A DNA stretch of 64,000 bases from Octopus bimaculoides (Eukaryota). Where the stretch lies: contig NC_068994.1 in assembly GCF_001194135.2 (NCBI RefSeq), positions 2,759,041-2,823,040 of the forward strand. Reading direction: 5' to 3'. Under the pieces are notes generated by a model. It did not search any database and was not told where the DNA came from. It saw nothing but the letters and a program-made list of their open reading frames with translations. Of this stretch, positions 3,575 to 64,000 are shown piece after piece. Both the position numbers and the translations under genes were made by a program. Each line of letters starts with the position of its first letter. Within the stretch, counting starts at the first letter, position 1.

Positions 3575-3679
3575 ATCACTAGTGATGGTGATGTTATGCC
3601 TCCATTCATCTTCCCACACAGCCTCAGACTCAACACGGATGCCTACATCAAGTGCCTGGAGGAGGTAGTGCTGCCCTGG
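3575..3679 (+). mobile_element. Tc1/mariner-superfamily transposase fragment (105 bp)
   Basis: Translates ITSDGDVMPPFIFPHSLRLNTDAYIKCLEEVVLPW, typical of the DDD catalytic region. Confidence 0.75.
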
Positions 3680-3943: not shown

Positions 3944-3994
3944 ATATGCATATATACATGTATATATACATATATGTATCATATATATGTAAAT

Positions 3995-4054
<60 letters not shown>

Positions 4055-4330: not shown

Positions 4331-4469
4331 TATATATATATATATATATAGCATGCAATGGATAAATTGTCACTATCACGTACTTTTAATTTTGCACGTG
4401 CACATTGTTTGTTTTTAATTTTGTTGCTTACAAAGTATAGTAGGGTCAGTTGGGAACCATCTGTGAGAA

Positions 4470-5060: not shown

Positions 5061-5099
5061 CTGTTCTTTTGTCTTGCAAAGTTTCATGACAACCTCACT

Positions 5100-36560: not shown

Positions 36561-37752
36561 ACCTTCAAGGATGATCAAATTGATGTGGCTATTCTGTTAA
36601 AATTCTCATACGTTGATGAGAAGAATTTCAAAAGGTTGAGGTTCGAGGAATAAGAGTTTAGTCAAAGCATTTACTTCAGTGTTTGGATGGAAGGATAGGG
36701 ATGAGGAGAATGTGAGAGGTAACAAAAACTGATGGGTTGCAATTGATATCTTATATGCTCAGAACTAACACTAAGAGAAGAGATAGAGGAAAGAAGCAAC
36801 ATTTTGCTTGGCAAATGTGTATAGGACTCTCATGAAAGAAAGTTAGCCAGTTAGATATTCATTTATTTTTCAATATGATGCATGACTTTTTTTGGATTTG
36901 ACTTAGGTTGTTTTTAAGCAGCATAATCCAAGTTATGAGAGATCTATTCCTATATGGCTCACACTAGAGCTTTGTAAAGCTAAAGTATTTTTAGTCCTAC
37001 AGTTGACACTTTATCTTTTGTGACATAGTTTAAGCATTGTAATATATGTGAGGTTGCAATGAAAGATTATGAGGCTTGCATTTGTAGCAACTTTGAAATT
37101 TTAATTTGCACGTTGTTCTCATGAGTAGAGAGGATGAAGTACAGCTCTGTCTTTAATATTTGTAGCAACTGTTTCTTTATATTGTTGAAAGAAACTAGGA
37201 TATCATATCCCTCAGTGGAATATGTTTCCAAGCTCTATATTCATCACAGCAGTGCATGTCAAATGTAAAGTGTTTTGTTTGCATGATAATTATGCTCATG
37301 TGGAAAAGATTATCAAAAATGAAGGCTGTCATCATCTGTAAAGGAGTGTTTTCAGCAACAGTTAACATATGTGGGTTAGGTCTATTGAGATTATGTGTTA
37401 ACCTTTATTGCTAATACCAAGAGAGAAAAGTGAGCAGTGGGAAGAATGGATTCTAAATAATTAAAAGAATCATCTTTTGCAAAAAGGAATATAGTAAATT
37501 TCTTGAATGTCAGATAGAGATGGAGATTGAAATATGTCTAACTTAGAGACAAATAGAAAACAAAGAAGTTTTGTGAACAAAAGATTAAATTACATAAGGA
37601 AAGCTTTAGGAATACAATGAAATGAATGTGCATTGAATAAAACAGTAATTCTTGTCATGGTGTGATTTTTAATACTCTTATTTTCTTTCTTTACAGAGCA
37701 ACTCACTAAATACTTCACATGCTTTACTCCTATAACTGTGATTCCAAGCAAT

Positions 37753-40128
37753 ATGTTGTTATCCATATACATATTTTTAATCTTACTGCACTGTTGTCAA
37801 TGTGTAGATCTCATCTATCATGTACAAGAAGAAAAAGGTGCAAACACCTTCGTTGGAGATATTGCAAGTGACTCACAATTGTTTGCTAGTTTCTCATCTC
37901 AGGATTATGGACACATTACTTTTACTCAACTCAAACGCCGGCAGTCTAGTAGCTCTCTTCTGTTCAATGTTACTAAGAGTGGGAAATTATACACAGCCCA
38001 ACGGTTAGATGCTGACTCTCTTTGTACATATAACAAAGAATGTTCAAAAATTGTCAAAGTTGCAGTAAGGCAAGCAGAAACATTTATAAAAGTATTGAAA
38101 ATCAAAGTGATAATTGAAGATATCAATGATCATCAACCTGTATTTTCTGACAAGCAAATTGATCTTCAGTTTTATGAGACAGATGGGAAAGGGACAAAGA
38201 AATCAGCGCCAAGTGCCATAGATGGAGACATGGGAGCTTTAAATTCCAAAATTAACTATAGACTAAAAAATAATGTAAATCAGACATTTTCATTATTTGT
38301 TTCCAAAAGAGTTGATGGTGTATCAACATTGGAAATTATCTTAGAAAAAAAACTTGATCGAGAGATCAAAGATCTATATTTAGTGCAAGTTGTTGCTCAA
38401 GATGGAGGTTCTCCACCACATCAGTGTATTCTAAATGTTCAAATTTCTGTTATTGATGAAAATGATAATCGACCTGTTTTCTTTCAAAATATGTACAATG
38501 TTTCAGTGAAAAACACTCATTCAAGAATGAGGCCTGTTGTAATATTATCAGCAAAGGATAAAGATTCAGGTGAAAATAGTCATGTTTCATATTACTTTAG
38601 TCCCAAGACATCAGCAATTGCAAGAGACCATTTTAGGATCAATAAAGAAACAGGAGAAATTTTCCTTGATAAAACATCAAAGTTAAGTGAGAAAATGAAT
38701 TTTAAGTTATTTATTGAAGCCAGAGATGGAGGTAGTCCACCTTTGAGTTCAATTGCAACAGTTATAGTGAGTGTCTTGAATCAAGAAAATAATGCCCCAA
38801 CTATAGATGTAGATTTTGTTTCTGTATTAACTGAAAACACTACAAAAATAGTTGAAAGTACCAAAGTTGGTAGTTTCATAGCATATGTTATGGTTACAGA
38901 CAATGATGTTGGACACAATGGAGAAGTCACATGTGACCTTAAACATGAAAAATTTAAACTTTCTGCAATTAGTTCAAAAGAATACAAGGTTATTTTAAAA
39001 GAGCGTGTTGATAGAGAAATTGAGGATCATTATATAATTACAATAAAATGCCAAGACCATGGATTCCCACCATTGCAGAGAGAAAGAAAATTTTCCCTTC
39101 AGTTGATCGATGTCAATGATGTACAGCCAATGTTTACTAAAGACACATTCAAATTTTTGACCTATGAAAATGAAAAACCATCATTTCCAGTTGGATTTGT
39201 TAATGCCACTGACCCAGATTTAGGGCTAGGAGGCAAATTGTCATATGCTTTATTTGATAAAAACCAATTTGATATTCCTTTCAAAATAACAGACAATGGA
39301 TTTATTTCAACTAGAAAATCTCTTGACCGTGAACAAAACAGCATTTATAAATTTCAAGTTTTAGTCAGAGACAATGGAAGTCCATCACTTAATAATACAG
39401 CTAACGTTATTGTTGAAATTATGGATGAAAATGATAATGCTCCTTATTTCACCTTTCCTAGTGTTAGCCCCTTTAGTTTGGATCTTCATTACCATCCACA
39501 GAGTGACACTGAAATCACTGTTCTGAGAGCATCAGACAGAGATAGCCATGTAAATGCTTTCCTTACCTATGAATTAATTGGAGGTAATGATAAACGATTA
39601 TTTATGATTAATGCTCATTCAGGTATTTTATCTTTTTCTCGAGCAGTTTATCAAAATGATGCAGGGTCATATGAACTTCAATTTATAGTTAAAGACAGTG
39701 GAAATCCAGTTCTATCAGCAACAGCCATTTTGTCCTTAACATTGACAGTCAGTAATAAAACATCAACAATGTTAACAGCTGTCCAGATTCAATCCAGTGA
39801 TATGATTGATGTAAACTTAGTTATAATTATTGTTGTTGTAGCAGTGGTGCTGTCTATTGCCATTGTGATATTCATTACAACATGCATTGTTAAATACAAC
39901 TACCCCAGAAATGCTAACCATGGCACAGATGTAAATACTTCATACCAGTCAAGAAGTGAAATGCGAAATCTCATTTATCAAACTAACAATCGAGTTTCAA
40001 TGACAAGAGGCCAAAATGAAGGCATGAGTCCAAATACTCCATCAATGAGATCAAGGGGTCAATTTTATCCAGAAATCGAATCTCAGAAACCTTCCACTAT
40101 GATCAGAACACTTTCAAAGTCTTCACAA
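37753..40128 (+). CDS. PCDH: Protocadherin 1 of window, large coding exon: signal peptide, EC1-EC6, TM helix (~39817-39891), proximal cytoplasmic tail
   Basis: Uninterrupted ORF; hydrophobic signal MLLSIYIFLILLHCCQC after ATG 37753; linkers DINDHQP, DENDNRP, QENNAP, DVNDVQP, DENDNAP; LDRE/DxD/DGG motifs; EC1 C-X5-C; acceptor TTTCTTTCTTTACAG ends 37696; donor CAA|GTAAGT at 40128/40129 (phase 0). Family-level symbol only. Confidence 0.97.
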
Positions 40129-40329
40129 GTAAGTTCATTGCTTTCATTATCATTATTTTAAGTTGTTTTATTGTTCAAGTGAAAATAATTGAGATTGATT
40201 CATGATAATATGAAGTAACTGAAGATTAATTTGTTGGTATTAAAACAAAAACTGATTTTTAAAATACAATAATGTCTGAAATAAATTATTTTTTTGTTTG
40301 GGAAGCAAGTCATTTTATTTTACTTCATT

Positions 40330-42450
40330 TACTCCTCCCTTTTTAGCATTTTTTTTTTCACTTCATACTCTTTCTTTTTGGCATGTATTTGCAGGAATTC
40401 TGTGTTCTTCCTTTTTCTTCCACTTGTATGCATGGGTTCTACCACCTGTAATGGTATTGGTACCTGGAATGTGTTATACAATCATTCCATAGGTTCTTCT
40501 AATCTGTCTGATTCGTTTTCTATGAATCTCTTCTTTAATTGGTTCATGTGTCTTTTTTCAATACCTTTTTTGCTTTTTACCCAATACATCATTTTTCCTA
40601 TATACTTTGTAATTTCACCTTCTTCCTAGTACTGCTTTCCATTTTTATACAACATCATGTACACCTTATCACCAATTTTGAAAAATTTTTATATGACTTT
40701 CTTGGCACTTTTTCTTTCCTTGGCAGGTAACAGTTTATCAAAAGCTGATTTCACCTTCCTCATGAACATCAGTTCTGCTGGTGACCTTCCTGCTGGTGTA
40801 TTGGAGTTTGGTGTCATCCTGTACACCCTTAGGAATTGTTGCAGAGTGACTTCTTCTGTGACTTCCTTGTTTGCTTTTCTCAAAGCTCTTTTAAACATGT
40901 CAACAAATCACTCTGCCAGTCCATTTGATCTGGGATGGTAAGGCACTATAATTCTATGTTCTACTGTGAACATTTCGCAGAATTTTCCATTATCAGATAC
41001 AATCACGTCTGGGATACTGAATCTTGCGAATAATTTGTGCAAAAAATTTATTACAATTAAGGCAGTTGGTCTTTTGCATTTAACAATTTCCGGTCATTTT
41101 GTAAACCTGTCAACTACCACTAAGTAAGCGACTAAGTAGTAGTTAATGGACCCAAAAATTGATGTGTAGTCTTGTCCATGATTTTTTACTTCTAGCCAAG
41201 GTTCCCATTTTTGAGTTGGCAATTTCACTGCCAGAGCAGGCTATAATTTTTTTCTACTGGCAATAGTGTCCTTGACATGTGCGCTATGGCCTTTTGGCTG
41301 CCATCATCACATTTGTGTAGGAGTATGGCACCTACTTTATACTCACTACCATCTGTTGCAAGTGTTATCTCCAACTTTGGATCGAATTGTTTATATCCTC
41401 ATCACCACTGTTATAACGTGAACTCTTGTCCACTTGTATGTTATTTGTTGACAGTGTACTATCCTTGTCACCACTATTATGTTGTGGTGGTATTCCATGT
41501 CTTATTATCTTTGACTTGTCTATCATGCTTTGCTGATAGCTCTGCAAGACGATGACTGGGAAACATCTAGAGTGCTAACATGGAGAGTGCTAACTTCATT
41601 TCTTTCTAGCATTTGTAGGTCTTCTGCATTTAGGCCCATGTCTCACTATCATGTAGTTTTGCTGTTCATATGCAAGTATCACAAATTCTGCCTTTTACTC
41701 TAAAAGACAAACCTTTTGTTGCCAACAGAGATAAACAGCTCCCTGAACTTTCATCTGCCTGTTCTTAGGCTTGCTGCTATACTTTCAAAACATCTTCCAC
41801 CTCTGTTAATAAAGGTACCTAGGTAACAGAATCAATCTGTTAGCTCTGGGGAAATTTGCTTGGCAACTAAGAGTATTTTATTTTGTGTGCACTCTTCATG
41901 CTTATTACTTCTGCACAGCTGTCATATACAAATCTGCTTTCTCTAGTAACCTGTCCATGATTCCACTGTACCTCTTGTGTGTCCATAGTTTGCATTGATT
42001 ACACTGTATGGAATTCTACCAACTTCTCTTCTATATGTTGGGCAAGGTCATTTCTCTGATGGGAGTAGGGTCATATCTACTTTCTCATTTGCTAATATTT
42101 TAGGCTTTGCTAAATTACTTTGAAGCTTTTCAATTCCAAGTTTGGCTTCCATGCTTGGAATTTCTCCTCTAATCTTACTACAGTTTCTGCTATAAGAATG
42201 AGGACATCACAATATGTGAATTCCCATTTTTATGGTTAGGAAGTCTAAGATGACTAGATAGGGATAGAGAACTGAACCTTGCTGGGCATACTAAATTCAT
42301 TGCTATTTTTGTTTCTAACTCTTACCTGCCAACAGAATCTCTGTACATGGCTTTCACAAGCCATTTAACTTCTCTCAGCTTCTCAGCACCCACCGGATCA
42401 CCAAGCTAGGGATTCTGTCAAAGGCTTTCTTTGGATGAACCAATACACTG
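40330..42450 (-). mobile_element. Degenerate Ty3/Gypsy pol (RT/RNase H remnants and integrase) antisense in protocadherin intron 1
   Basis: Minus strand: VVVDRFTK, FARFSIPDVIVSDNG, PYHPRSNGLAE, FLRVYRMTPN...SPAELM, KRHMNQLK; stops and frameshifts. Confidence 0.8.
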
Positions 42451-43470
42451 TTAAAAATTTTTGAGAAGTACAGATAAAAGTCTATTATGTATCAAATGAA
42501 GATGCCAATCAGTAATTTTAACCTTCAAATGCACTTTTAAAAGCGCTGATGTATGAACAGGGTTAGGGTTAGTAACAAAAATTATAGATTTAATTTGAAA
42601 TTCAATTTGAAATTTTACAATTTTATTTAGATGAAGTGAGATGGAAATGCTGTAAAAATTCCACATGCAAAAAGTTCCACACACCTATTCTGGAATAAAA
42701 TTTTATGATATATTTTACTACAAAAATTAAAACAGCATCTTAATCAAAACAGGTTCATTACATTTTCAAAGACTATATATAACCTTTGTTGCATAATCAA
42801 AATTAAGATCTTTCTTAAATAATATCACAATAAACTTTACGAAAATCACAACAATGTATAAAGTATTGCTTTCTACCTCTGATGAAAGTAAAATTAAAAA
42901 TTAAAATTAGAGTGTAAGAAAAAATGCTTTGCAGCATTTATTCCAGTTCTTTCTACTTTCAACTTTGTCTTTCCTTTCGAGATTGGTAAATAAAGGACCA
43001 GTCAAGTGCTGGGAGTGAAGCATCCAGCTAAATCCCTCTCCTCAAAATTGCTGGCCTTGTACATAAATTAGAAACAATTATTCCTGATAAAAGAGAGGTC
43101 ATTCTAATATTTACTAGTGTTAATTTGAGACATAACTATCAACTAAAGAGCTAACCAGTGCCATCTAACATGACTATCAGCGGAAGAGCTAACCAGTGCT
43201 ATCTTACTAGTACTATCAGATGGAAACTGAATCCAAGTTTACTAGGAAAAGGCTTATACCACAAAATATTTTTTCAAATATAAGATATCAGCACATGAAC
43301 AACACTAAATTGCTACAGAATATTCTTATCCTTAATAGAGATTTCTTAAAAGATTTTAACAAATTAGAAATGGAGGAACATATCAAAACTGAAGACTGTA
43401 ACTGATGCTCTTTTTCTGTCCTCACCAAACTTTATATTTACAAGTTTTTATTCTTTTTCAATACTCTTAG

Positions 43471-43627
43471 ATGTACAGTCAACCTGTTACTGTGACATCT
43501 GGTGGTGAGCCAATGGAGCAAAACATTGTTATGGTCCCTAACTATCTGAGTGATACAATGTCTACCAAAAGAGACAGTGGACATAACTGGAATGAAGGAG
43601 AAACAAAACAATATGAAGAAATACCTG
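43471..43627 (+). CDS. PCDH: Protocadherin 1 exon 2 (cytoplasmic tail): MYSQPVTVTSGGEPMEQNIVMVPNYLSDTMSTKRDSGHNWNEGETKQYEEIP+G
   Basis: Pyrimidine tract plus TAG acceptor at 43469-43470, phase 0 matches exon 1; donor G|GTATGT at 43628; RDSGH recalls the DSG motif of protocadherin tails; a homologous exon exists at 62170-62320. Confidence 0.85.
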
Positions 43628-44412
43628 GTATGTTAGTGGTTATTTTCTGTTTTGTTTCCTCCTTGCTATTCATTAACCTTAATTTATTTGAATTGAAAGA
43701 TGCTCCAAAACATGAAAATTATTATATTTGTAAATAAACTGATCATAACACAGAATCTAGCAAAAATAAGTTTTCTGTGTAAATTAGTTAAATTAATGGC
43801 AAGGATATTAGCAGGCATTAGTTTACTAACAAACCCTCTGATTTATAACATTATGGCTGCTAAAATCTCAATTTTGTTAAAATAGCCCTCTCAAAAATGC
43901 AAGAAAATAGGAGCATGACCCACAACTAATGTACAGTTTAAGTTTAAACACAGAAAGGAGTATACAAGATAAATCCAACCAACTTTATAAAATATCACTC
44001 TCATTTTAGCTCAGATCCTGAATAAATGGATTTGAAAAAAATACTATGCATGATACTTGAAAGAAATGTTTTACATTAACTGATGATAGAATTCAAGTTC
44101 CTGTTTTGAAACTACTTTTTTTTTCTTTTCATTTTGGAATACAATGTATATTTACAAGTTATTATTGTCATTAGAATTACATGTTAAAAAAACTTCCTGT
44201 ATTGTTATCATCCTTGAAATATGCAACTGGATATGAAAGTTTAAACTTTCAGATAAGCATATAATGGAATTCAGTTTGTCTTAGCAGGAAATAAAATAAA
44301 AAAATTTGTTGGCTATAACTGAAAAATATACATATATATATGTATATATTTTGTCAACATATATATCCCAAAAAGAAGCACATACTAAAGCATAGAGCAG
44401 TAGTGTATTTAT

Positions 44413-44561
44413 ATGCAGTGAAGTTTATGTCTGGTCATAGAGTGACCTATGGTTTCACATCCATAAAGGGCCTAGAGTCTGATGAGCCATCCATGGGGCT
44501 AGGCTCTTTATGGATGCAAAACCATTAGTCACTCTATGACCAGACACAGACTTAACTGCAT
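44413..44561. mobile_element. 149-bp fold-back MITE in protocadherin intron 2
   Basis: ~64-bp arms ATGCAGTGAAGTTTATGTCTGGTCATAGAGTGAC... / ...GTCACTCTATGACCAGACACAGACTTAACTGCAT. Confidence 0.85.
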
Positions 44562-44600
44562 CTAAAAATATACATATACATATATATGTATGTATGTATG

Positions 44601-44650
<50 letters not shown>

Positions 44651-44689
44651 CACACACATACATACATACATACATATATATATATGCAG

Positions 44690-45200
44690 AGTTTGACCAC
44701 CTCCTGTACCTGCACCTCAACCTCAGCACCATCATGGCATCTGATGTGGCTTTTTAAACCAGACAATGTTCTGAAAAGATACCCACTTAGATTGCACATC
44801 CGATTTGGACCACCAAGAGCTGCAGATAAGTTCTGATCTTTGTGGATCTTTAAATGTCTTTTGAGGCCTCCATTTTGGCAAACCTTCTGCCATACATTGC
44901 ATTCAAACGTGTGCTCAAATATATAGGCAGAATAGTTGGTGGAGGTTTGTTTTTCATGGGTTCACAAATTAGATTTGAGCCCAGCAAAAGAAAGGCATGG
45001 TCTGTCACAAACTGTGCACACAAAAAGGTCATTGTCATTCACCTTCTCAATCGTAACATTGTTCCTTAGATCTCTGTTGAGTCTTACATGCATTATCCTG
45101 GATTCTTCAAATACTTTCACTCCACACTTTTGTTCGCCATCCAACTCGATCTGAAACAAGGGTTTCCATGTCTTATGGGTCCATTCCAAGTGACTGCCAT
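44690..45200 (-). mobile_element. RTE/BovB-like LINE 3' end with C2H2-like knuckles
   Basis: GVKVFEESR...FVCTVCDRPCLSFAGLKS and CNLSGYLFRTLSGLKSHIRCH. Confidence 0.7.
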
Positions 45201-45792
45201 CCTTAAACCTTTTTTTTTAGGTTTATGCTGATAGCATTTCCCCTCTGCAAGCTCACCATAAAACAGGTGTTTTGGCATGCGTTCACCTGTCATTCAAACA
45301 ATATGACCACACCATCTCATTTGGTACATATGTATGTATACATATATACATGTATACATATACACACACACATATATATATTGTGTGTGTGTGTGTGTGT
45401 GTGTGTGTGCTTGTGTGTATGCATACATATGCCACCAGATAATCCTCATGTGAAAATTATGGTTTAAACTTTAAAATTGTCTGGAGATTTTAAATTATTT
45501 TATTTCTTTAACAAGATATATTAAAAGAAATGCAAATCTCACAACGTTAAGTACATATTCTAGGACAGAGATCTAAGATAAAATATATTCACCATTTTTT
45601 AACTGGTAAGTTATTTTTACAATATGTTTTTTAACCTACTGACGTGATAAATCTGATGGTCTAATTCAAGATTGAGTATTACTGTCAAGCATTTTATGGT
45701 TTATAATTATACTTAATTTTAAATTGGGTTTCTAAAACTATTATCCTGTAAAGATAAGTTTGATAATTTTCTCTTCTTTTGGCATTTTCCAG

Positions 45793-45839
45793 GGCTTTAC
45801 AACTTCAGACACATATCATCCACTTCAAAGATGGACTGA
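45793..45839 (+). CDS. PCDH: Probable terminal coding exon 3 of protocadherin 1: (G)LYNFRHISSTSKMD*
   Basis: Strong acceptor TTTTCTCTTCTTTTGGCATTTTCCAG; phase 1 fits exon 2; TGA at 45837-45839; no homology support, so tentative. Confidence 0.5.
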
Positions 45840-50639: not shown

Positions 50640-52260
50640 GATGCCTTTTTCAGTTGTTCCCCTTGCAACATCTGTTTTCTGATAGTTGCTAATACATTGG
50701 TTTGTCATGTGAATGTAGACTACAGGAGCCATCTAACTCATAAAATAAAGATTTGCTTGACACTATGTAGCATTAATTTAGTTCATAGACTTCAGTGTTT
50801 TGGAACGAACAATTGAAGGCAATCTGAATAAGTCTTAATATTTCAAAATAGTCACATTATTCTATCATGATGCTTTCTTTCTCAATTAAGACTATATCTG
50901 GCTTCCCTATTCTCAATCTCATGGTTGCACTGAATCATAAAATCCCACAGGATCTTTGCATTATCATTTTCGATGATGCCTTCGGGTTTATGGTCATACC
51001 AATTTTTTGCTCTGTCAAGTCCATATTTGTTGTAAAGTGTCCAATGGACAAGCCTTGCTATACTGTCGTGGCATTTCTTATATTCCTTCCAGGCTAGTAG
51101 CATACATTGGCTGGTAATATGCCATACGGTTTCACCATTTTGTCCACAAATTCTGCACTTATCACTTTCTGATATGTTGTCTATTCTGTATTTTATGTAA
51201 TTTGTTCTTAGTGCTTGCTCTTGGGCAGCACAGATTAGAGCCTCCGTTTCCGGTTTTAAATCACTTTTAGTGATCCACAAACATCTTTTTTCTCTGTCTG
51301 TCTTATCTTCATCATCCCTATGAAATTGTCCATGTATTCTTTTCTTTATCCACCTGTTTTCAGTTTCATTCTTTTTCAATTGCTTGTACAGTGCTTTATC
51401 TTTGCAATCTGTCATCTTACACAAGCCTGACCTTCTTACTTCTAATAAGTGGTTCTGTGGCATTTTTTTACGTACCATGCTATGTTGTTTTCTTCTGCTC
51501 TAATGCTGTGTTCACATCCAATAAGTCCTCTTCCCCCTCTTTTTCTTGGTACATACAGTCTGCCTGTGCCACTTTTTGGGAGGAGTGTTCCATATCTAGT
51601 TAGCAACTTCCTTGTCTTTCTGTCTAAGTTCTTTAGTTTGTCTACTGACCATGCAATTACCCCTGCTCCATATCTAAGGAGTGAAACCGCCCAGGTGTTG
51701 ATAGCTTCAATCTTATTCTGTCCATTTAATTTCGACTCAAGGATCAATCTCAGTCTGCACAAGTACCCCACCTTAAATTTTTCTGTCATTTCTTTCTTCA
51801 TCAATTTATCCATTTCCAGAGTCCCCAAGTACTTATAGCCCATCTCTTCTATCTGCTTCATAACCTCCCCCGATGGTATCATTAGCCTGTCCATACATTT
51901 GATTTTGCCTCTCTTCAAGACTAACACACCACACTTTCTCAGTTTGAACTCCATTCTGATATCAGCACTGAAAGTATACACTGTATCAGCGAGGGAACTG
52001 ACTTGGGCTTCATCTTTACTATAAAGTTTGAGGTCATCCATGAATAACAAATGGTTGACTTTTTGTTGACGGCTTTTGAATACACACCCAGCTCTTGCTT
52101 TCTTCAGAATCAGTGTTAGTGGTATCAATCACAGTACAAAGACCAGTGGGGATAGGCAGTTCCCTTGGAAGATGCCCCTCCTAATTTCTACTGTCCCTAA
52201 ACTTTTTCCAAGCAATCGCTCAACATTCGATGCAATTTTTCCAAGCAATCACTCAACATT
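50640..52260 (-). mobile_element. 5'-truncated R4/Dong-type retrotransposon (RT end, CCHC knuckle, RLE), next to a (TAA)n tract
   Basis: VNHLLFMDDLKLY, YKYLG, GGRGL, AAQEQAL.T, CRICGQNGETVWHITSQC, HDSIAR.VHW, KILWDF. Confidence 0.9.
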
Positions 52261-52428: not shown

Positions 52429-52699
52429 GGGATCATAAATCCGAAATACTGACCGTCAACAAAATTAGATTGTCAATCAACAAATTGTTTTCTTAACTAT
52501 CATATATTCTATCATATTTTATGTGAGTGCAGATAGTTTCAAAAGAAGCAATATAAGGGAGGTCACTCTACTCAACTACCGTCTTTTGGAAAAGAATGCA
52601 AAATAAAGCATTGAACTTGGAAATAAACTTCAAAGAGAAATATATATTTAAAAGCTAGTTGTTAAAATGGATGTATACAAAGCAATGTACTCAGGCTGC

Positions 52700-54150
52700 C
52701 TCTAGGAGCTTCTCTTTGTTAATGACCTTACTCTAATAGCTGAGTCACTACCAGAACTAGAGAAAAAGTTTCAGGTGTGGAAGCAAGGTCTAGAATTGAA
52801 AGGCCATAGAGTCAATCTAGCAAAAACCAAAGACTTAATAAGTAGGAAAGCAGACAAATCACAAATCCCTTCAGATTGAGCACAAATCCCTGCTCAATCT
52901 GTAGAAAAGGCATTGGCAAAAAGTCCATACGATGTACCCGGTGTAAGCTATGGATACATAAGAAGTGCAGTAATATCAAAGGAAGGTTAACTGGGAAGAT
53001 AGTCTTTGTGTGTGGCAGAAGAACAGGTGCAATAAACACTGAAGATGTACAGGATACAGATTCCATCACATGCCAGGGGAAAAAGCTAGAAGTAGTTGAT
53101 AGCTTCGATTACCTAGGTGACCAAGTCAGTAGTGGGGGGTGAATGCTCTGAGAGCGTAGCTGCTCGAATAAGAATAGCCTGGGCAAAAGTTAGAGAGCTC
53201 CTACCTCTGCTGATAACAATGGGCCTCTTCCTCAGAGTGAAAGGTAGACTGTATGGTACCTGTGTGCAAACAATCATGCTACACAGCAGTGAAACATGGG
53301 CTGTGACTGCTGAGGACATGCGTGGGCTTGGAAGAAATGAAGTTAGTATGCTCTGCTGGATGTGTAATGTCAGTGGGCAAACATGACAGAGTGTAAGTGC
53401 TCTGAGAGAAAAGTTGGACATAAGAAGCATCAGATGTGATGTGCAAGGGAGACAACTGTGCTGGTATGGTCGTGTTGCATAAGGATGAGTACAGCTGTGT
53501 GAAGAAGTGTTACACTCTAACAGTGGAGGGAGCTTGTAGAAGAGGTAGACCCAGGAAGAGATGGGATGAGGTGGTGAAGTACGACCTTCAAACATTGGGC
53601 TTCACAGAGGCAATGACAAGTGACCGAGACCTTTGGAGATATGCTGTGCTTGAGAAGACCTGGCCTGTCCAGTGAGAACATAGCCATGACAGATACCAGT
53701 GTCGCATAACTGGCCCATTTAAAAATACCCTTCAATCATTGGGCAATATGCCATGCTTGTAAAAACCTTTTGGACCAAGTGAAATTGTAGTCATGGCCAA
53801 TGCCAGTGGCACCTGACTGGCAACCATGCCAGTGACATGTAAAAGCACCATTCAAGCATGGCTGATGCTAGTACTGCCTGACTGGTACCTATACCAGTGA
53901 CAAATAAAAAGCACCATTTGTGCGTGGTCAATGCCAGTGATACCAGACTGGCTTCTGTACCGGTTGCACATAAAAAACACACGCTACACTCTTGGAGTGG
54001 TTAGCGTTAGGAAGGGCATTCAACTGTAGAAACCTTGCCAAATCAAATTGGAGCCTGGTGCAGCCTCCTGGTGTGTCAGTCCTCAGTCAAACCGTCCAAT
54101 CCATGCCAGCATGGAAAGCGGAAATTAAACGATGATGGTGATGATAATGA
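52700..54150 (+). mobile_element. 5'-truncated RTE LINE with PHD-like insert and full 3' tail
   Basis: LFVNDLTLIAES..GHRVNLAKTK; CSICRKG..CTRCKLWIHKKC; VVDSFDYLG; RIRIAW.K.RELLPLL; HSSETW; GRPRKRWDEVV; tail ends AAACGATGATG. Confidence 0.9.
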
Positions 54151-56649: not shown

Positions 56650-56686
<37 letters not shown>

Positions 56687-56900
56687 NNNNNNNNNNNNNN
56701 NNNNNNNNNNNNNNNNNNNNNNNNNNNNNNNNNNNNNNNNNNNNNNNNNNNNNNNNNNNNNNNNNNNNNNNNNNNNNNNNNNNNNNNNNNNNNNNNNNNN
56801 NNNNNNNNNNNNNNNNNNNNNNNNNNNNNNNNNNNNNNNNNNNNNNNNNNNNNNNNNNNNNNNNNNNNNNNNNNNNNNNNNNNNNNNNNNNNNNNNNNNN
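56687..56900. other. Assembly gap (214 N) that probably hides ~2.2 kb of protocadherin 2 coding sequence
   Basis: Sequence resumes mid-ORF in the cytoplasmic part of a protocadherin exon. Confidence 0.8.
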
Positions 56901-57119
56901 CCAAAATTTCTCTCAAGGACTGAGATGAGACAAATCCTGTATCAGACTAACAATCCTGTTGCAATAACTAGAAATGCAGAAGAGATATTTAACCGAAATC
57001 TTCAATCAATAAATCCAAAAAGTCCTTATTATACAGAGACAGAACAACCAATAAATGAATGGAAATTCTCAACAACACCCAGGAGGCTACCACCAGTTCC
57101 TCAGATATGTAAAATATAA
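56901..57119 (+). CDS. PCDH: Protocadherin 2 of window, 3' end of large exon (partial); donor position reads AT, ORF runs on to TAA
   Basis: SRTEMRQILYQTNNPVAITR aligns with SRSEMRNLIYQTNNRVSMTR of gene 1; ends VPQ|ATATGT at 57104/57105 where gene 1 has SSQ|GTAAGT. Confidence 0.8.
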   Translation, partial: PKFLSRTEMRQILYQTNNPVAITRNAEEIFNRNLQSINPKSPYYTETEQPINEWKFSTTPRRLPPVPQICKI

Positions 57120-57431
57120 TCTATTAACATCTATGAATATGTTCATAATTTCATATATAAATATCATTTCTACAGAAGAAATGGAATGAATATGTCATTA
57201 TGTATTATGAGGAAATTAAATTAATTCTGAAGCTTTCAACATGGTTATAATTGTCATAAATAGATTTTTGGGTTTCGTTATTGGGATAGATTGCATAAAG
57301 AACATCAGAATTTAGCAGTAAGTGAATAACCAGAGTAAAATTCCTTATGCAATTCTTATTATATATCATAGAAAAATAATAGAAACCATTTAGAATAAAA
57401 TGTAAAAAGCATTTGCAAGTATTTGAAAATA

Positions 57432-58433
57432 TATGAGTGTCGGCTGAAAAGTTCATCGGCTGACCAAGATACTCTCATGGAATGTAATCTCAACATAGTC
57501 CCCGTTGCAATTCACACAAGTCTTCCATCGGTGTTGCAGGATCCTATTTGAGAATAGGGAGGGTGAAAAACTTCTTCAAATTCACAGTCATGCATAGCAG
57601 CCATTGAAACCAAGAAGTTATGTACTAGAGCATTGTCCTGATGAAACAAGATCCCTTTATTCAGTTTTCTTGGGCATTTAGTTTTTATAGCCTTTCATAA
57701 ATGCTTCAGAAAGTTGGTATAGTTCTCTCCATTGATGGTGTGGCCCCTTTGAAGATAATCAATAAACACAGTGCCTTTTGTATCCCTTCCCTGCTGATAA
57801 AATGACCTTGTCCCTCTTTGGAGCAAATAAGGAGGGGCGTTTCCACTGCATGGATTGTCTCTTTGTTGCTGTGTCATAGTGATGAAGCCAGTACTCATCC
57901 TAGTTAAGACATACTCAAGGAAACCAACTGGATCTGCCTGAAACAATGTCAGATTTTCCCATGATGTGATCAGCCTGGTGGGCTTTTGATCACATGTCAG
58001 AAGACATGGCACTTGCTAAGCAGAAACCTTCATCATATCAAGTTCATTGAGCAGAATATTTTCAACTCGCTCACAGGATATGCTAATAACATTGGTTATT
58101 TGATTTATAGTCAATTGCTGGTCATCCATCAACTTGTGTTGAATACAGTCAATGTCTTCCTTGGTGGTAACAGTTGCAGGACATCCAGATCTTGGGTCAT
58201 CTTCAAGACTCTCCATTCCCCTCCTAAATTCAGCTGTCCATTTTCAAGAGAAGTCGTTACTAGTTACTTTTGAAGTTTTCTTTGAAATATCAGATGTCAG
58301 TTTACCTAGAAAGAAATCATGCTGAAATAAATAAATTATTAATTTCTGCATAGTTGAAATTAATGCATGCAAGATTTCACAGCACTGGCATCACTCCTTC
58401 ATAGTCAGCCTATGAACTTTTCATCCCCCCCCC
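57432..58433 (-). mobile_element. Mariner transposon, internally deleted and frameshifted
   Basis: TIRs GCTGAAAAGTTCATCGGCTGAC / GTCAGCCTATGAACTTTTCATC; SLEDDPRSGCP, ERVENIL.NEL.M.KVSA, TVFIDYLQRGHTINGENY. Confidence 0.88.
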
Positions 58434-59319
58434 CACACACACACACTTGTAGCTCTAAGAACATATTGTTGTTTTGTTAGCATGGGGATTTAGGTTCTGA
58501 GAGTTTTCAGTAAATGGGTGTTTGCGAGTGAGGCAATAAGCCAACCAATAAATCTGTTCTTAGAATAAATATAATTCAGGATACTAATCACTGAATGCAA
58601 TATGAAATTCCATATAAAAGGGAAACATTTTATTCTGAGTTGTTCAATTATAGTCCAACTTGCTGAAGATATTTTGTCCTATGTCTGCATGTTGTATTTA
58701 TATATTTCATTTTGTATTTATTTACCTTGTCAGCAATATGAAACAGAAATCCTGTCAATAATAGTTAGTTATAGCAACTCTTGTCTCTCAAGAGAGAGAG
58801 CACACTTTCTTAGTTAATACTATGAATGCAATGCTTAAAGAAGTCAGAAATCAGATGGATAGTGGGTTCCATTCAATACAGATATCTATTAGAAGAGAGC
58901 ACTTTCTTACAATTTCATCACATGAAAATACTAAGAGGAATCAAGATGTAATCTATACACAGTGTAAGAAAAGATTGTAACTTTAAATATTTGAGGCATC
59001 AAGTTTTATTCTCTCAAATGGTTTAACCTTTGTGCAACATACCTACATTACTGTGGCTCCTGGCTTGATATTCAGTTAATATGAATAACCCATACAAACT
59101 TTCTCTTCTTAAGTCTCATGATAAATAATTTTTCATTACATAGACTACTTTTTTGAAATACTTTCCTCCTTTCAATCATATCAAACCCCACATTAACCTC
59201 ACTCATATTATTTACATCTTTTTCTAACTATCTAATATGTTAAAAGTTTCACAGAATGTTAACAGTTCTTCCTACTCTTCCTACTTGAACATAGTTATTA
59301 TTATTGATTGTTATTTGAA

Positions 59320-61750
59320 GTTGATGATTGGCAGAATTGTTAGAGCTTCAAACCAAATGCTTTGCAGTATTTGTTTCAGTTCTTTACATTCTGAGTTCAT
59401 ATTCTGACATGGTGCACTCTGCTGTTGGATTCAATAGAATAAAGTACTAGTAAGTCTTGGGGTTGATGCAATTGACTAACCCCCTTCTTTCAAAATTGAA
59501 GGCCTTGTACCTAAATCATAACTCATTATTATTATTTGAGGGCAGAGAATTGGTAGAATCATTAGAGCATTGGACAAAGTGTTTTGTGGTATTTAGTTAC
59601 AGCACATCATATTCTGATTTCAAATTCCACTGAGATCAGCTTTGCCCTTCATCCTTTTGGAATTGATAAAATAAAGTACCAATCAAGTAATGATGTTGAA
59701 GGTATTGATGAAAATCCTCCCTTGAAACCTGTGTCCATGTACCTAAATAAGAAGCCATTATGATTATTATTATTATTATTATTATTATTATCATTATTAT
59801 TACTATTATTATTTAGGACAGAAGTGAGTTGATTACATTGACCCATGTGCCCAAAGTTGACCTTAACTGAGTTTAAATTCTGTTCAGGTCAACTTAGCCT
59901 TTCATCCTTTCAGTGTTAATGAAATAAGTACCACTTGAGCCCTTAGATTAATGTAATCAACTAATCTCCTCCCACAGAATTCCAGACCCTGTACCAATAG
60001 TAGAAAGGATTGTTGTTGTTGTTGTTGTCAAGGTGATGTGCCAGCAGAATTGTCAGCACACTGGACAAAGTGCTTAGCAGCATTGCTCCCCTCCAAATTA
60101 CTGGCCTTGCACCAAAATTTGCAATCATTATCATTGTTATTATTTTTTTCCTTGTGTGCACTCCTGTCGGGATTACATTTTGTAGATTTTTTTCCCAAAG
60201 ATAAATGGTTGTTCTCTTTCTGTGTCTATCACAAGAAATTACAAATGGAGATTAGAAAGTTATTTTCAATATTTCTCTGTCTTATTAGGGTAAAAAAATT
60301 ACATTTTTGGTGGATACTTTCAGTTCGTTTTATGCTTTTTTGTGCATGTATTTTTTATTTAACCACATATAAAAATAGTTCTTTACATTATGATAGTAGG
60401 AGAAGTACACACACACACACACACATGCCCATGTACACACTCATAGAGGCTTTGTTACATGAAAGTAATGATAGAAATTGAAATAAAAGAGCTTCATTTT
60501 CAAACAAAATTTGCATCACCCCAGTACTTGAGTGGTACTTTATTGATCCCAGTGGGATGACTAGCAAAGTTGACCATGACAGAATTTGAACTCAGAAAGT
60601 AAAATGCTGGAATAAGTATTGTAAGGCACTTTTTTTTACAGTGCTCTAGTGTTTCTGCCTGTCCACTACATAATTCAGATTAGCAAGTCCAGCAATTTTA
60701 TCAATTTTGGAAAGAAAAACGCAGAGTTGATCTTGTAATTTGAACTCAGAACTTTAAGAGCCAGATCAAATATTGCAGGGCACTTTTTACTGTACATTAA
60801 TGATTCAGCTACGCTGCCACCTTAATTGTTTATAACATACACACAAAATTTAGGAAGTGATCTTAGTTAACTATTTTAAAGCTTGACTAGTAGTTTATCT
60901 ATGGATTCCACAATAATGAAAGGTAGTTGACCTTAGAAGAATTTGAACTGAATATGTAAAGGGTTGGAAGGTATTTTGTTTAATGTTCAAAGGATTCTGC
61001 TTGGCACAAGGCCAGCAATTTCAGGGGAAGGATTAAGTCGATTATATTGACCCCAATGCTCAACTGGTACTTATTTTATTGATCTTAAAAAGATGAAAGG
61101 CAACGACAACCTCAGTGGTATTTGAACTCAGAACATAAAGATGGATGAAATGCTGCTAAGCATTTTGCCCAGTATGCTAATGATTCTGCCAGCTCACCAT
61201 AATAATAATAATAATAATGATAATAATAATGCTTTCTAATTGATGTATCAATACCAGCAGATGACAACGTTTCCCTAAAAGAAATGGAAAAACTTTCAAA
61301 ATACAAAGACCTGGAAATAGAGGTAACTCGAATGTGGAATCTGAAAACAGAAACAATTCCTATCATAGTAGGTGCCTTAGGTATAATAAAAAAATATTCA
61401 GACAAATACATAACAAAAACATCAGGANNNNNNNNNNAAACCACAGCACATACCCAAGGCACACAGAGCTGTGCTCAGTAGTGAAGTGAAAGCACGTTAT
61501 AAAAATAAAACTACTGAACAATAATAATAATAATGCTTTCTACTGGAGGCACAAGGCCTCAAATTTGGTGGGAGGGAACTAGTCGATTACATCAATCCCA
61601 GTATTTCACTGGTACTTAATTTATCGACTCCGAAAGGATGAAAAGCAAAGTTGACCTCGGTGGAATTTGAACACTGAACCTAGCAGCAGACAAAATACCA
61701 TTAAGCATTTCACCTGGCATGCTAATGATTCTGCCAGCTCACCACCTTAA
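59320..61750. mobile_element. Dense pile-up of about nine tRNA-SINE copies: plus-strand block 59320-60110, minus-strand block 60500-61750
   Basis: Repeated GGCAGAAT..TTAG, TTCTGA.TTCAAATTC, CTTTCATCCTTT, AAGTACC motifs and their reverse complements. Confidence 0.75.
61239..61523 (+). mobile_element. Very short 5'-truncated R4/Dong copy (RLE C-terminus) with 19-bp TSD
   Basis: IDVSIPADDNVSLKEMEKLSKYKDLEIEVTRMW...PIIVGALG; flanks ATAATAATAATGCTTTCTA at 61220-61238 and 61524-61542. Confidence 0.85.
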
Positions 61751-62169
61751 TAATGATAATAATAATAATGATAATTTTCCTTTCTATTATTTCATGTAAC
61801 TTTAGTAACTGAGGTTAGATGTAATATAATTGACCCAATATTTTCTGGAAATATACCTAATTGTATCATTTAGTTCATGCTACTTTGATTATAAAGCAAG
61901 TAAAATAGCTACACTGCTGCCATTAACAGCCTTTTGATATTTTCTTTTAAAAAGTGATAATTTATAAATGTTAGTTCAATCTCAATTATAACTTATAATT
62001 TTAACTATAATTCTAACTTTTAACTTTTAATTCCTTATAACTATCAGTTATAAGGAATTAAAGCAAGATTATTTTTCCCCCTTTTTATCAGAAATTAGAT
62101 TTTTTAACTGTATGTAACAATGGAGATAACATGTGCAAAGTAAGTTTCCCATTTATCTTTTTCTGAAAG

Positions 62170-62320
62170 AATTACAATAAAGATGTAACAGAGAGTTCAG
62201 GTGAACAAAAATGTTATAATGGTACATCAAACAACTTAAATACAACTCTAACTTCTCATAAAGAATGAAATCGAGGATGGAGCGAAGGAGATATTACTCA
62301 ACAGACATCTGGAGTATCAG
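62170..62320 (+). pseudogene. Decayed exon-2 homologue of protocadherin 2 (in-frame TGA at 62266-62268, two compensating frameshifts)
   Basis: NYNKDVTESSGE / NVIMV / NNLNTTLTSHKE*NRGWSEGD aligns with MYSQPVTVTSGGE / NIVMV / NYLSDTMSTKRDSGHNWNEGE; AAG acceptor (phase 0) and G|GTAATT donor (phase 1) match gene 1 phases. Confidence 0.8.
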
Positions 62321-62977
62321 GTAATTACAAAATAAATCAGAAACTTCAAATTATTATCAGAAGTTTTTAATTACCTAAAATAAATGTAAAGGAAAAAAAT
62401 TATTACTTAATTTTCTTTTAAATATATTAGTTCATAAACTATCATTTCCATAGAAAAAAAATTGTTACTTAATTTTTTAAAATATATTAGTGCATGAACT
62501 ATCATTTCCACAGGAAAAAAAATCATAACAAAATATGAAATATTTTCAGTTCAGAAATCAACAATATATTTCAAAGCTAGTTGAAGTTGTGTTTATATAT
62601 ATATTTTCAGAGTATAGTAACTATCACCAAACATACCTCCAACAGCAAAGAGTGAATATGAACAAGAAACCTATCTAGCACCAGTTTAACATACATCATG
62701 TTTACTTTCCTTTAATTACAGAACCACTTAGGAAAATAATTTAATATAATTTAATGATGACATATTAAACACTACTTTAAATGTATTGAGGTTTTTTTGT
62801 TTTGAGTTTTTTTTTAAAAGATTTCTATAAAGAAAAATCCTTTTAATTGTAATGAAAATCATAAAACTATTGATAGTTTTACTGAAGCTTTTTGTTATAA
62901 TCAAAAACAACAAATATCTATATAGTTGTTACACTGATAAATATTTAACAATACAATTTATATTTTGTAAAATAAAA

Positions 62978-62980
<3 letters not shown>

Positions 62981-63021
<41 letters not shown>

Positions 63022-63098
63022 TCTCTCCTCTCCTCTCTCTCTCTCTCTTCTCTCTCTCTTCTCTCCTCTCCTCTCCTCTCCTCTCTCTCTCTCTCTCT
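62981..63098. repeat. (CT)n/(CTCTC)n pyrimidine microsatellite
   Basis: Direct reading. Confidence 0.9.
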
Positions 63099-63231
63099 CA
63101 AATTCAATTAATAGGAGCCAAATTAACATCATCACATTTGTCCTTTGTCATTTCCTTCATGGCAGTCAACTCCCTAAGATCTGCTTCCTCCCACTATTTT
63201 CCATTATTTCTTTGGTCTTTTCCTCTTACAG

Positions 63232-63308
63232 GTTCCTTCCACTTGGACCGTCTGAGGCCTCTTTACACATCTATATTTGACAAAATGCTTGTTCAGCTTT
63301 TCATGTAG
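63232..63308 (+). other. Candidate terminal exon 3 of protocadherin 2: (G)SFHLDRLRPLYTSIFDKMLVQLFM*
   Basis: Long pyrimidine tract ending CTTACAG|G, phase 1 compatible; no clear homology to gene 1 exon 3. Confidence 0.3.
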
Positions 63309-63501
63309 TGAAAAATTGTAATAAAAGGATTTGAAATAGAAGCCATACAAAATGCATTAATAAAGTAAAATTTTAGTAGCAAATTTATAGATGTATATTA
63401 GAGAATTTACTGGATGATAAACAACCACATCATTTTATTTTATACACTTTAATGGCAAAATAGACATTACTATCAACAATAGATATATTATCATGTAAGA
63501 A

Positions 63502-63548
63502 GTTCACATACATGTAATGTATGTGAACATGTTCACATACATTACATG
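63502..63548. repeat. Perfect 38-bp palindrome (63511-63548) overlapping a 12-bp stem (63502-63528)
   Basis: CATGTAATGTATGTGAACA|TGTTCACATACATTACATG; three alternating copies of GTTCACATACAT. Confidence 0.9.
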
Positions 63549-63841
63549 AACAAAGGCATTCTGAAATACAACTAATCTTGATATACAAAAAACATTTTCA
63601 TAAATTTCCTCAGAACAAAAAGAATTATAATATGATTTTAAAATCATTATATAATTTTGGAAAATTTATATAATTTTGGAAAATTTTATATAAAATTACA
63701 ATTAAAAAATACAATTTGAGTCATAAATTCAAAAAATTGAATTGATAAATTAAATTTATATATGTTTATTATGATGTAATTATTTTGTTTCATAACATTA
63801 AATGTTTAAAAGAATTTGGTGACAGATTTGTTATTCTAAAC

Positions 63842-63911
<70 letters not shown>

Positions 63912-64000
63912 GTACACATATACAGAGAGAAACAGATTATTAAGATAATTAAGTATAATGAATAGATATATTAAGTTCCATAAACAACCAAAAGGCACTG

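What the first reader, a model, noticed from the sequence alone, without database searches (positions are those of the whole stretch)
57102..57119. GT-to-AT donor change: tail-less protocadherin, or an A-to-I editing-gated splice switch
Seen: at the position homologous to gene 1's CAA|GTAAGT, gene 2 has CAG|ATATGT, a consensus donor except for G>A at +1; unspliced, the ORF adds ICKI and stops at 57119. Established: inosine is read as G by the spliceosome and ribosome, and coleoids have very extensive ADAR editing. Inference (speculative): editing A57105 would recreate the donor, and editing the A of the exon-2 TGA (62268) would give Trp, so both visible blocks to a full-length tail are A-to-I reversible. 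Default product: a receptor with a truncated tail. Caveats: both As have a 5' G, which ADARs disfavour; the paralogue has Ser, not Trp, at the stop; plain loss of function is the simpler explanation; and a cryptic GT exists at 57109.
Basis: inference. Interest (0 to 1): 0.75.

Follow-up and report, generated by a model that had tools for sequence, protein, structure and literature searches.

The report
Young protocadherin pseudogene in octopus array
The GT-to-AT splice-site change is really in the sequence, but it is one of three separate disabling mutations in a recently dead copy of an octopus protocadherin gene, so it is an ordinary pseudogene and not an RNA-editing-controlled splice switch.

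Summary
The window is Octopus bimaculoides chromosome DNA at the start of a tandem protocadherin array. At 57102-57110 gene 2 reads CAG|ATATGT, and the unspliced frame adds ICKI and stops at 57117-57119. Six paralogues in the same species have GT at this position. So do the positional orthologues in O. vulgaris and Argonauta hians, both with GTATGT.

The editing interpretation does not hold.
- The exon-2 stop (TGA, 62266-62268) comes from CGA (Arg) by a C-to-T change. Both orthologues still have CGA. Editing would give Trp, not Arg.
One base is deleted in exon 3, in the C run at 62627-62628. This puts the conserved C-terminus (PNIPP...EQETYLAPV) out of frame, and no A-to-I change can mend it.
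- The RNA around the donor folds no better than shuffled sequence (z -0.07).
- Only the last 68 codons of exon 1 are in the assembly. They follow a 214-N gap whose left flank is not cadherin sequence.

The O. vulgaris orthologue is intact: an 800-codon exon 1, a GT donor and an open tail. The few other changes on the O. bimaculoides branch (5 synonymous, 3 non-synonymous) suggest the gene died recently.

Verdict: a young, lineage-specific pseudogene. A still-used tail-less receptor remains a minor possibility.

The parts
56687..56900 (.). Assembly gap (214 N). It lies where the transmembrane segment and the whole ectodomain part of gene 2's exon 1 should be. The left flank (to 56686) is (AT)n and non-cadherin DNA.
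   Evidence: tblastn with gene 1 and paralogues finds no second ectodomain in the window. L009:1-3218 of the O. vulgaris orthologue has no counterpart in the window. In three paralogues the gap sizes match the missing codons (244 N vs ~285 nt, 1774 vs ~1635, 639 vs ~633), and a fourth gap of 2318 N is large enough for a whole exon 1. Gene 2's gap is about 2.2 kb too small.
56901..57104 (+). Last 68 codons of gene 2's exon 1 (cytoplasmic juxtamembrane part, PKFLSRTEMRQILYQTNN...PRRLPPVPQ). The frame is open.
   Evidence: 92.6% nt and 91% aa identical to the O. vulgaris orthologue at L009:3219-3422. 92% aa identical to paralogue P0121.
57105..57110 (+). Inactivated 5' splice site, ATATGT. The ancestral form is GTATGT, so this is a G>A change at +1 (57105).
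   Evidence: A1: gene 1 and five paralogous copies have GT. A4: the O. vulgaris orthologue has CAG|GTATGT in a stretch that is otherwise about 94% identical. A. hians also has GTATGT.
57105..57119 (+). Read-through codons ICKI plus TAA (57117-57119). This would be the end of any unspliced product.
57105..62169 (+). Former intron 1. It is 5.07 kb here and 2.1 kb in O. vulgaris. The extra length comes from O. bimaculoides-specific insertions of SINE-like repeats (about 57820-59380 and 59735-60954) and a 10-N gap at 61428-61437. The acceptor AG at 62168-62169 is intact.
   Evidence: Collinear blastn blocks against L009. Repeats. Acceptor in A5.
62170..62320 (+). Exon 2 (151 nt, phase 0 to 1) with an in-frame TGA at 62266-62268. 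It was derived from CGA (Arg) by C>T at a CpG.
   Evidence: A5: O. vulgaris has CGA. A. hians has CGA. The protein alignment shows R in both orthologues and in P0104.
62611..62689 (+). Exon 3 with a 1-nt deletion in a C run (62627-62628 CC, against CCC in the O. vulgaris orthologue). The frame coming from exon 2 now reads EYSNYHQTYLQQQRVNMNKKPI and stops at TAG 62676-62678. The conserved ending PNIPPTAKSEYEQETYLAPV and its TAA (62687-62689) are out of frame.
   Evidence: A2 (three paralogues), A6 (orthologue).
37753..45839 (+). Gene 1, the intact reference paralogue (XP_014767714.1, 'protocadherin gamma-B6 isoform X1', 859 aa). Exon 1 is 37753-40129 with donor CAA|GTAAGT, exon 2 is 43471-43627, and exon 3 is 45793-45839.

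Best explanation
Gene 2 is a young, lineage-specific pseudogene. It is the O. bimaculoides counterpart of the protocadherin gene that lies directly downstream of the 'gamma-B6-like' gene (gene 1) in O. vulgaris and Argonauta hians, at the proximal edge of a tandem protocadherin sub-array.

Shown:
- In the O. bimaculoides assembly the copy carries three independent derived lesions within about 430 nt of tail-coding sequence. They are G>A at +1 of the intron-1 donor (57105), CGA>TGA in exon 2 (62266) and a 1-nt deletion in exon 3 (62627-62628).
- The assembly also lacks the promoter-proximal 3.2 kb, including most of exon 1.
- The orthologues are intact at all three sites.

Inferred:
- Selection on the gene, or at least on its tail exons, was lost recently in the O. 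bimaculoides lineage, and the lesions then accumulated neutrally.
- The donor change stops normal splicing of intron 1.
- Any residual transcript would end at ICKI-stop, or splice from the weak out-of-frame GT at 57109 to an immediate stop.
- No RNA editing is needed to explain any of this.
For: Species and family:
- Gene 1 is 100% identical to an O. bimaculoides protocadherin on CM046614.1.

Orthology:
- Window 56901-64000 is collinear with O. vulgaris L009:3219-7391 at 85-93% identity, introns included.
- A. hians P0138 is the gene immediately downstream of the gene-1 orthologue.

Donor:
- GT in gene 1 and five paralogous copies (A1) and in both orthologues. AT only here.

Stop:
- CGA in both orthologues.

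Frameshift:
- The deletion is absent from three paralogues and both orthologues. The resulting frame is shown.

Orthologue state:
- O. vulgaris exon 1 is an intact 800-codon ORF with an open tail.

Missing 5' part:
-.
- Gap sizes elsewhere in this assembly agree with the missing codons.

Timing:
- With A. hians as outgroup, the O. bimaculoides branch has 5 synonymous, 3 non-synonymous and 1 nonsense change. The O. vulgaris branch has 9 synonymous and 6 non-synonymous.
- Pairwise dN/dS to the orthologue is 0.20. Decay is therefore recent.

Literature:
- Fragmentary protocadherin reading frames that are likely pseudogenes, together with ongoing duplication and gene conversion, have been reported in coleoid protocadherin clusters (PMC9068888).
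Against: - No reads, other individuals or RNA data could be consulted. The lesions rest on one short-read-based assembly and could be alleles segregating in the sequenced animal.
- The exon-1 remnant is still open. It shows few non-synonymous changes (dN/dS 0.10 to the closest paralogue, and 0.34 to the orthologue). Exon 1 might therefore still be in use.
- The absence of the ectodomain could be an assembly hole. Exon 1 of four neighbouring paralogues is also broken by gaps, because the paralogous exons are about 90% alike.
Confidence: 0.78

Rival explanations
1. Tail-less but functional protocadherin. Exon 1 is complete in the real genome and hidden in a mis-sized gap. Loss of the donor fixed a product with six cadherin repeats, the membrane span and about 95 juxtamembrane residues ending in ICKI. 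Exons 2 and 3, no longer used, are decaying.
For: - The 68 visible exon-1 codons are open and look constrained. dN/dS to P0121 is 0.10, and gene-2-specific changes are 5 synonymous to 2 non-synonymous.
- All three lesions lie at or after the exon-1 end, as expected if only the tail was given up.
- Gaps inside exon 1 are common in this assembly.
Against: - The gap is 214 N. Its left flank is not cadherin sequence, and gap sizes elsewhere are accurate to about 10-15%.
- The orthologue's 1 kb upstream region and 2.2 kb of its exon 1 have no counterpart anywhere in the window.
- With only 204 nt visible, zero lesions in exon 1 is not significant.
- NCBI's gene prediction on the assembly gives no protein containing this tail, although that word-indexed search also missed known relatives.
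- The lost tail holds the motifs best conserved in the subfamily: GWSEGD, EYSNY, PNIPP and EQETYL.PV.
Confidence: 0.12
2. Editing-gated splice switch. ADAR converts A57105 to inosine and recreates a GU-like donor. It also converts the TGA to UGI (Trp). A full-length tail is then made only where editing is high.
For: - Inosine is read as G by the splicing and translation machinery.
- Editing is known to create splice sites. ADAR2 edits an intronic AA to AI in its own pre-mRNA (PMC4381283).
- Coleoids edit heavily, protocadherin transcripts included (from my own knowledge of the cephalopod editing literature; not checked here).
- The donor change is of the G>A type that editing could mask.
Against: - A third lesion, the 1-nt deletion in exon 3, cannot be reversed. 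It removes the conserved C-terminus.
- The stop arose by C>T from Arg. Editing gives Trp, which none of the aligned relatives has there.
- Lesions in exons 2 and 3 show that those exons are not under selection.
- The donor region folds no better than shuffles (z -0.07), and no inverted repeat reaches it. The stop region has z -1.28.
- Both adenosines follow a G.
- The orthologues use a plain GT.
Confidence: 0.02
3. Assembly or sequencing artefact. The real genome has GT, CGA and CCC, and the contigs carry consensus errors or are chimeras of paralogues.
For: - The locus is poorly assembled, with gaps at 56687-56900 and 61428-61437.
- The donor lies 204 nt from a contig end.
- The paralogues are about 90% alike, which invites mis-assembly.
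Against: - Three independent errors within 430 nt of a short-read consensus are unlikely.
- None of the three variant states occurs in any paralogue examined, so a chimera cannot have imported them.
- Order and orientation of the contigs are confirmed by collinearity with O. vulgaris.
Confidence: 0.08

Closest known systems
Pseudogenes and gene fragments in coleoid clustered protocadherin arrays (Albertin et al. 2022, PMC9068888; 168 multi-exon protocadherin genes in O. bimaculoides, Albertin et al. 2015 as cited in PMC6339937)
   Same: - A tandem array member with the family's three-exon layout: a large exon 1, then two short tail exons.
- It is fragmentary and has disabling lesions.
- It sits among paralogues that are homogenised by gene conversion.
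   Different: - This copy has intact positional orthologues in two other octopods, so its death can be dated to the O. bimaculoides lineage.
- NCBI's gene prediction on the assembly gave no protein for it. I could not check whether it is listed as a pseudogene.
ADAR2 self-editing that creates a 3' splice site (Rueter et al. 1999, as described in PMC4381283)
   Same: Only in concept: an A read as G at an essential splice dinucleotide.
   Different: - That case is an AA-to-AI acceptor inside a conserved duplex, and it regulates a working gene.
- Here the site is a donor with no duplex and a 5' G.
- The downstream exons are themselves broken.
Vertebrate clustered protocadherins (variable first exons spliced to shared constant exons)
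   Same: A large ectodomain, transmembrane and juxtamembrane exon ends at a phase-0 donor and is joined to short tail exons.
   Different: - In octopus each gene has its own tail exons and no shared constant region (PMC9068888; seen here for gene 1, gene 2 and the paralogues).
- Loss of the donor therefore cannot be bypassed by another variable exon.

Membership tests
Octopod clustered protocadherin gene (this subfamily) | Cytoplasmic part of exon 1 homologous to the family and ending at the family's phase-0 donor position | tested here: met
   68 codons, 91% aa identical to the O. vulgaris orthologue and 75-93% to paralogues. The exon ends coincide.
Octopod clustered protocadherin gene (this subfamily) | Six cadherin repeats plus a membrane span encoded in exon 1 | tested here: not met
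   Not present in the window. There is a 214-N gap with a non-cadherin left flank. The O. vulgaris orthologue has them. An assembly hole cannot be excluded.
Octopod clustered protocadherin gene (this subfamily) | Own tail exons 2 and 3 with the GWSEGD, EYSNY, PNIPP and EQ.TYL.P motifs | tested here: met
   Both exons are present with intact acceptors and the exon-2 donor. The motifs are recognisable but interrupted by a stop and a frameshift.
Processed or unprocessed pseudogene (non-functional gene copy) | Disabling lesions that are absent from intact orthologues | tested here: met
   Donor G>A, CGA>TGA and a 1-nt deletion. Both positional orthologues are intact at all three sites. The introns are retained, so it is an unprocessed pseudogene.
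Processed or unprocessed pseudogene (non-functional gene copy) | Relaxed selection (dN/dS near 1 on its branch) | tested here: inconclusive
   The O. bimaculoides branch has 5 synonymous, 3 non-synonymous and 1 nonsense change in 432 nt. These are too few to separate 'recently relaxed' from 'still constrained'.
Processed or unprocessed pseudogene (non-functional gene copy) | Lack of a functional transcript or protein | not testable with these tools
   No RNA-seq or read data were available.
ADAR-edited splice site | Target adenosine lies in a stable RNA duplex | tested here: not met
   300-nt folds: z -0.07 at the donor and z -1.28 at the stop. No inverted repeat includes 57105.
ADAR-edited splice site | Favourable 5' neighbour (U or A, not G) | tested here: not met
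   G57104 precedes A57105 and G62267 precedes A62268. The neighbour preference itself is from established knowledge.
ADAR-edited splice site | The edited product is functional and its downstream exons are maintained | tested here: not met
   Frameshift in exon 3 and a non-ancestral Trp at the stop.
ADAR-edited splice site | A-to-G mismatches between RNA and DNA at the site | not testable with these tools
   No transcriptome reads were available.
U12-type AT-AC intron | ATATCC donor, AC acceptor and a TCCTTAAC branch site | tested here: not met
   The donor is ATATGT and the acceptor is AG. No branch-site motif lies upstream of 62170. The orthologous intron is GT-AG.

The most novel reading that the evidence does not exclude
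The copy is still expressed. Its G>A donor mutation is tolerated because ADAR editing of the pre-mRNA restores a usable donor in part of the transcripts. This would be a 'harm-permitting' use of editing at a splice site. The product would be a protocadherin with a variant C-terminus in strongly editing neurons and a tail-less one elsewhere.
Probability: 0.02. Interest if true: 0.75.

Novelty: already known. Interest (0 to 1): 0.1.

Why it matters
It matters little beyond annotation. It adds one dated example of gene death to the birth-and-death turnover of octopus protocadherins. The copy is intact in O. vulgaris and Argonauta hians and broken in O. bimaculoides.

It also shows that several short 'uncharacterized proteins' in the O. 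bimaculoides annotation are pieces of protocadherins cut by assembly gaps.

Had the editing switch been real, it would have been a first case of a genomically dead donor rescued by editing in a neural recognition gene. The sequence evidence argues against that.

Tried and rejected
1. U12-type AT-AC intron. Rejected: the donor is ATATGT, the acceptor is AG, and the orthologous intron is GT-AG.

2. Cryptic donors.
- GT at 57109 (GTAAAA) adds 4 nt and gives ...PVPQI-stop.
- The in-frame GTTCCT at 57096 is a poor match to a donor and still runs into the TGA.

3. Alternative acceptors or donors that might restore the exon-3 frame. I checked these by hand, with no tool call. None exists, and the conserved frame has a TAA just upstream of the deletion.

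4. The short query with gene 2's tail returned only three 'tail-only' O. bimaculoides proteins. This first suggested a family of tail-only genes. Rejected: these are full protocadherins whose exon 1 is interrupted by N gaps. The same search also missed full-length relatives that were found later.

5. O. vulgaris loci L006, L007 and L008 (P0104, P0113, P0079) were fetched as candidate orthologues. They are paralogues, with 72-88% identity in exons only. The true orthologue was in L009.

6. L005 (the O. vulgaris gene-1 locus) is collinear with window 6.5-52.7 kb but ends 16.7 kb short of the orthologue. The sequence matching the left flank of the gap (52.7-56.7 kb) was therefore not seen.

7. 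Looking for gene 2's ectodomain among the O. bimaculoides proteins already fetched. None is closer than 84% to the orthologue.

8. Pfam on two other long ORFs in the window (44458-44961 and 53116-53601, both minus strand) found nothing.

Full report
**What the window is.**
- A stop-to-stop ORF scan shows one long cadherin ORF (37666-40158, + strand) and eight N runs. One of these is 214 N at 56687-56900.
- The long ORF is 100% identical to O. bimaculoides XP_014767714.1, 'protocadherin gamma-B6 isoform X1', 859 aa, on chromosome record CM046614.1 of GCA_001194135.2.
- Mapping that protein gives gene 1: exon 1 at 37753-40129 ending CAA|GTAAGT, exon 2 at 43471-43627, and exon 3 at 45793-45839.

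**The observation.**
- At 57102-57110 the sequence is CAG|ATATGT. The open frame continues ATA TGT AAA ATA TAA, so it reads ICKI and stops at 57117-57119.
- The frame upstream is open back to the first base after the gap (56901). It encodes 68 residues homologous to the cytoplasmic end of exon 1 in gene 1 and other family members.
- In an alignment with gene 1 and five paralogous copies from the same chromosome, the exon ends coincide. Every other sequence has GT where gene 2 has AT (A1).
- The putative exon 2 (62170-62320) has an AG acceptor, a GT donor and an in-frame TGA at 62266-62268.

- There is no ectodomain for gene 2 in the window. tblastn with gene 1 and with paralogues finds cadherin repeats only in gene 1.
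- The left flank of the gap is (AT)n and unrelated AT-rich DNA.
- Searching with gene 2's tail returned three short 'uncharacterized proteins' of O. bimaculoides. Their loci show that they are ordinary protocadherins whose exon 1 is interrupted by N gaps.
- In three of those copies the gap lengths agree with the number of missing codons: 244 N against about 285 nt, 1774 against about 1635, and 639 against about 633. A fourth gap, 2318 N, is large enough to hide a whole exon 1.
- Gene 2's gap of 214 N would have to hold about 2.2 kb.
- Either the ectodomain and promoter were deleted, or this gap is badly undersized. I could not decide which.

- Exon 3 of gene 2 (62611-62689) aligns with exon 3 of three paralogues and lacks one base (A2).
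- Read from exon 2, the frame becomes EYSNYHQTYLQQQRVNMNKKPI and stops at 62676-62678.
- The ending conserved across the family, PNIPPTAKSEYEQETYLAPV plus TAA, sits in another frame.
- By hand I found no alternative acceptor or exon-2 donor that restores the frame.

**Orthologues.**
- The O. vulgaris chromosome (OX597827.1) is collinear with window 6.5-52.7 kb around gene 1 (L005).
- Three candidate loci turned out to be paralogues.
- Locus L009 then gave the true orthologue. Window 56901-64000 aligns in order with L009:3219-7391 at 85-93% identity, including about 700 nt of intron directly after the donor and the sequence between and beyond exons 2 and 3. This also confirms that the contigs on either side of the 10-N gap at 61428 are correctly joined.
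- In O. vulgaris, exon 1 is an intact 800-codon ORF (L009:1023-3422).
- The O. vulgaris donor is CAG|GTATGT (A4).
- The codon at the O. bimaculoides stop is CGA (A5).
- Exon 3 reads CACCCAAAC where O. bimaculoides has CA-CCAAAC (A6).
- The conceptual O. vulgaris protein is a complete 876-residue protocadherin.
- In Argonauta hians, the gene immediately downstream of the gene-1 orthologue (P0138) has GTATGT, CGA and an undeleted exon 3.
- All three lesions are therefore derived in the O. bimaculoides lineage.

**Timing.**
- Against the O. vulgaris orthologue, the three coding pieces give dS 0.18, dN 0.035 and dN/dS 0.20. Gene 1's exon 1 gives 0.22.
- With A. hians as outgroup, the O. bimaculoides branch has 5 synonymous, 3 non-synonymous and 1 nonsense substitution. 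The O. vulgaris branch has 9 synonymous and 6 non-synonymous.
- The exon-1 remnant compared with its closest paralogue gives dN/dS 0.10.
- The numbers are small, but they exclude long neutral decay. Constraint was lost recently, or only for the tail.

**The editing hypothesis.**
- Editing can create splice sites, as in ADAR2 self-editing (PMC4381283).
- Here only one of the three lesions is a G>A change that editing could mask.
- The stop arose by C>T from Arg, and editing would give Trp. None of the aligned relatives has Trp there: the residues are R, R, R, Q, H, H and S.
- The frameshift is beyond the reach of editing.
- If an edited, spliced product mattered, exons 2 and 3 would be kept intact. 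They are not.
- A 300-nt fold around the donor is no more stable than shuffled sequence (z -0.07), and around the stop z is -1.28.
- The inverted repeats in the intron are SINE-like copies more than 2 kb from the donor.
- Both adenosines follow a G.
- A U12-type AT-AC intron is excluded by the donor and acceptor sequences and by the GT-AG orthologue.

**Conclusion.**
- Gene 2 is best read as a young, unprocessed pseudogene at the proximal edge of a tandem protocadherin sub-array. This is the kind of fragment already noted in coleoid protocadherin clusters (PMC9068888).
- A still-used tail-less receptor is possible only if exon 1 is hidden in the gap.
- An artefact would need three independent consensus errors that match no paralogue.
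- The editing-gated switch is not supported by any test I could run, and the third lesion contradicts it.
- Reads and RNA data, which these tools do not offer, would settle the remaining doubt.

Noticed in passing
L002 8074-9847 and 10001-12039; L003 9214-9852 and 10001-12027; L003 572-1685: NCBI 'uncharacterized proteins' LOC128249406 (138 aa), LOC106870064 (141 aa) and LOC106870065 (105 aa) of O. bimaculoides are tail-only pieces of protocadherin genes. For the first two, exon 1 is seen to be cut by an assembly gap and a neighbouring model holds the ectodomain half. The third starts about 390 nt after an N run at the edge of the locus, so its exon 1 was not seen.
   Followed up: yes
L009 1023-6057 (O. 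vulgaris OX597827.1): The O. vulgaris orthologue of gene 2 is annotated only as a 474-aa product (2229-6057). The DNA holds an uninterrupted 800-codon exon 1 plus two tail exons, 876 codons in all. The gene model looks truncated.
   Followed up: partly
window 50885-52128 (- strand): A LINE-like reverse-transcriptase remnant. RVT_1 scores E 3e-5 and zf-RVT E 1e-3, both below Pfam's gathering scores. It is also present at the orthologous place in O. vulgaris (L005 60276-62097, 88%), so it is an old insertion.
   Followed up: partly
window about 57820-59380 and 59735-60954; also 32.1-32.6 kb, 35.2-35.7 kb and 61.0-61.8 kb: A SINE-like repeat family of about 200 nt occurs in direct and inverted copies. 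Insertions of it and other DNA make gene 2's intron 1 about 3 kb longer than in O. vulgaris. Inverted pairs could form long intronic duplexes, but they lie far from the exons.
   Followed up: partly
window 52692-54150: A repeat with several 73-80% copies in O. vulgaris locus L006. It starts exactly where collinearity with O. vulgaris L005 stops, so it is probably a transposon insertion.
   Followed up: no
window 56901-57104 compared with L002, L003, L007, L008 and L009: The last 200 nt of exon 1 are more alike among paralogues (dS 0.15-0.6; 93% nt identity to a non-orthologous O. vulgaris copy at L009:12208-12415) than exons 2 are (dS about 1). This fits gene conversion within exon 1, as proposed for these clusters.
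   Followed up: partly
window 45.9-56.7 kb compared with O. vulgaris 79.606-79.623 Mb: Between gene 1 and the gene-2 tail, the O. bimaculoides assembly is about 16 kb shorter than O. vulgaris. O. vulgaris has a further cadherin-containing gene model (207 aa) running into L009:1-1033. This is either a deletion or a collapsed assembly.
   Followed up: no
window 3886-4494 and 56650-56686: (AT)n and (TA)n microsatellites border two of the larger N gaps. They are probably the reason the short-read assembly broke there.
   Followed up: no
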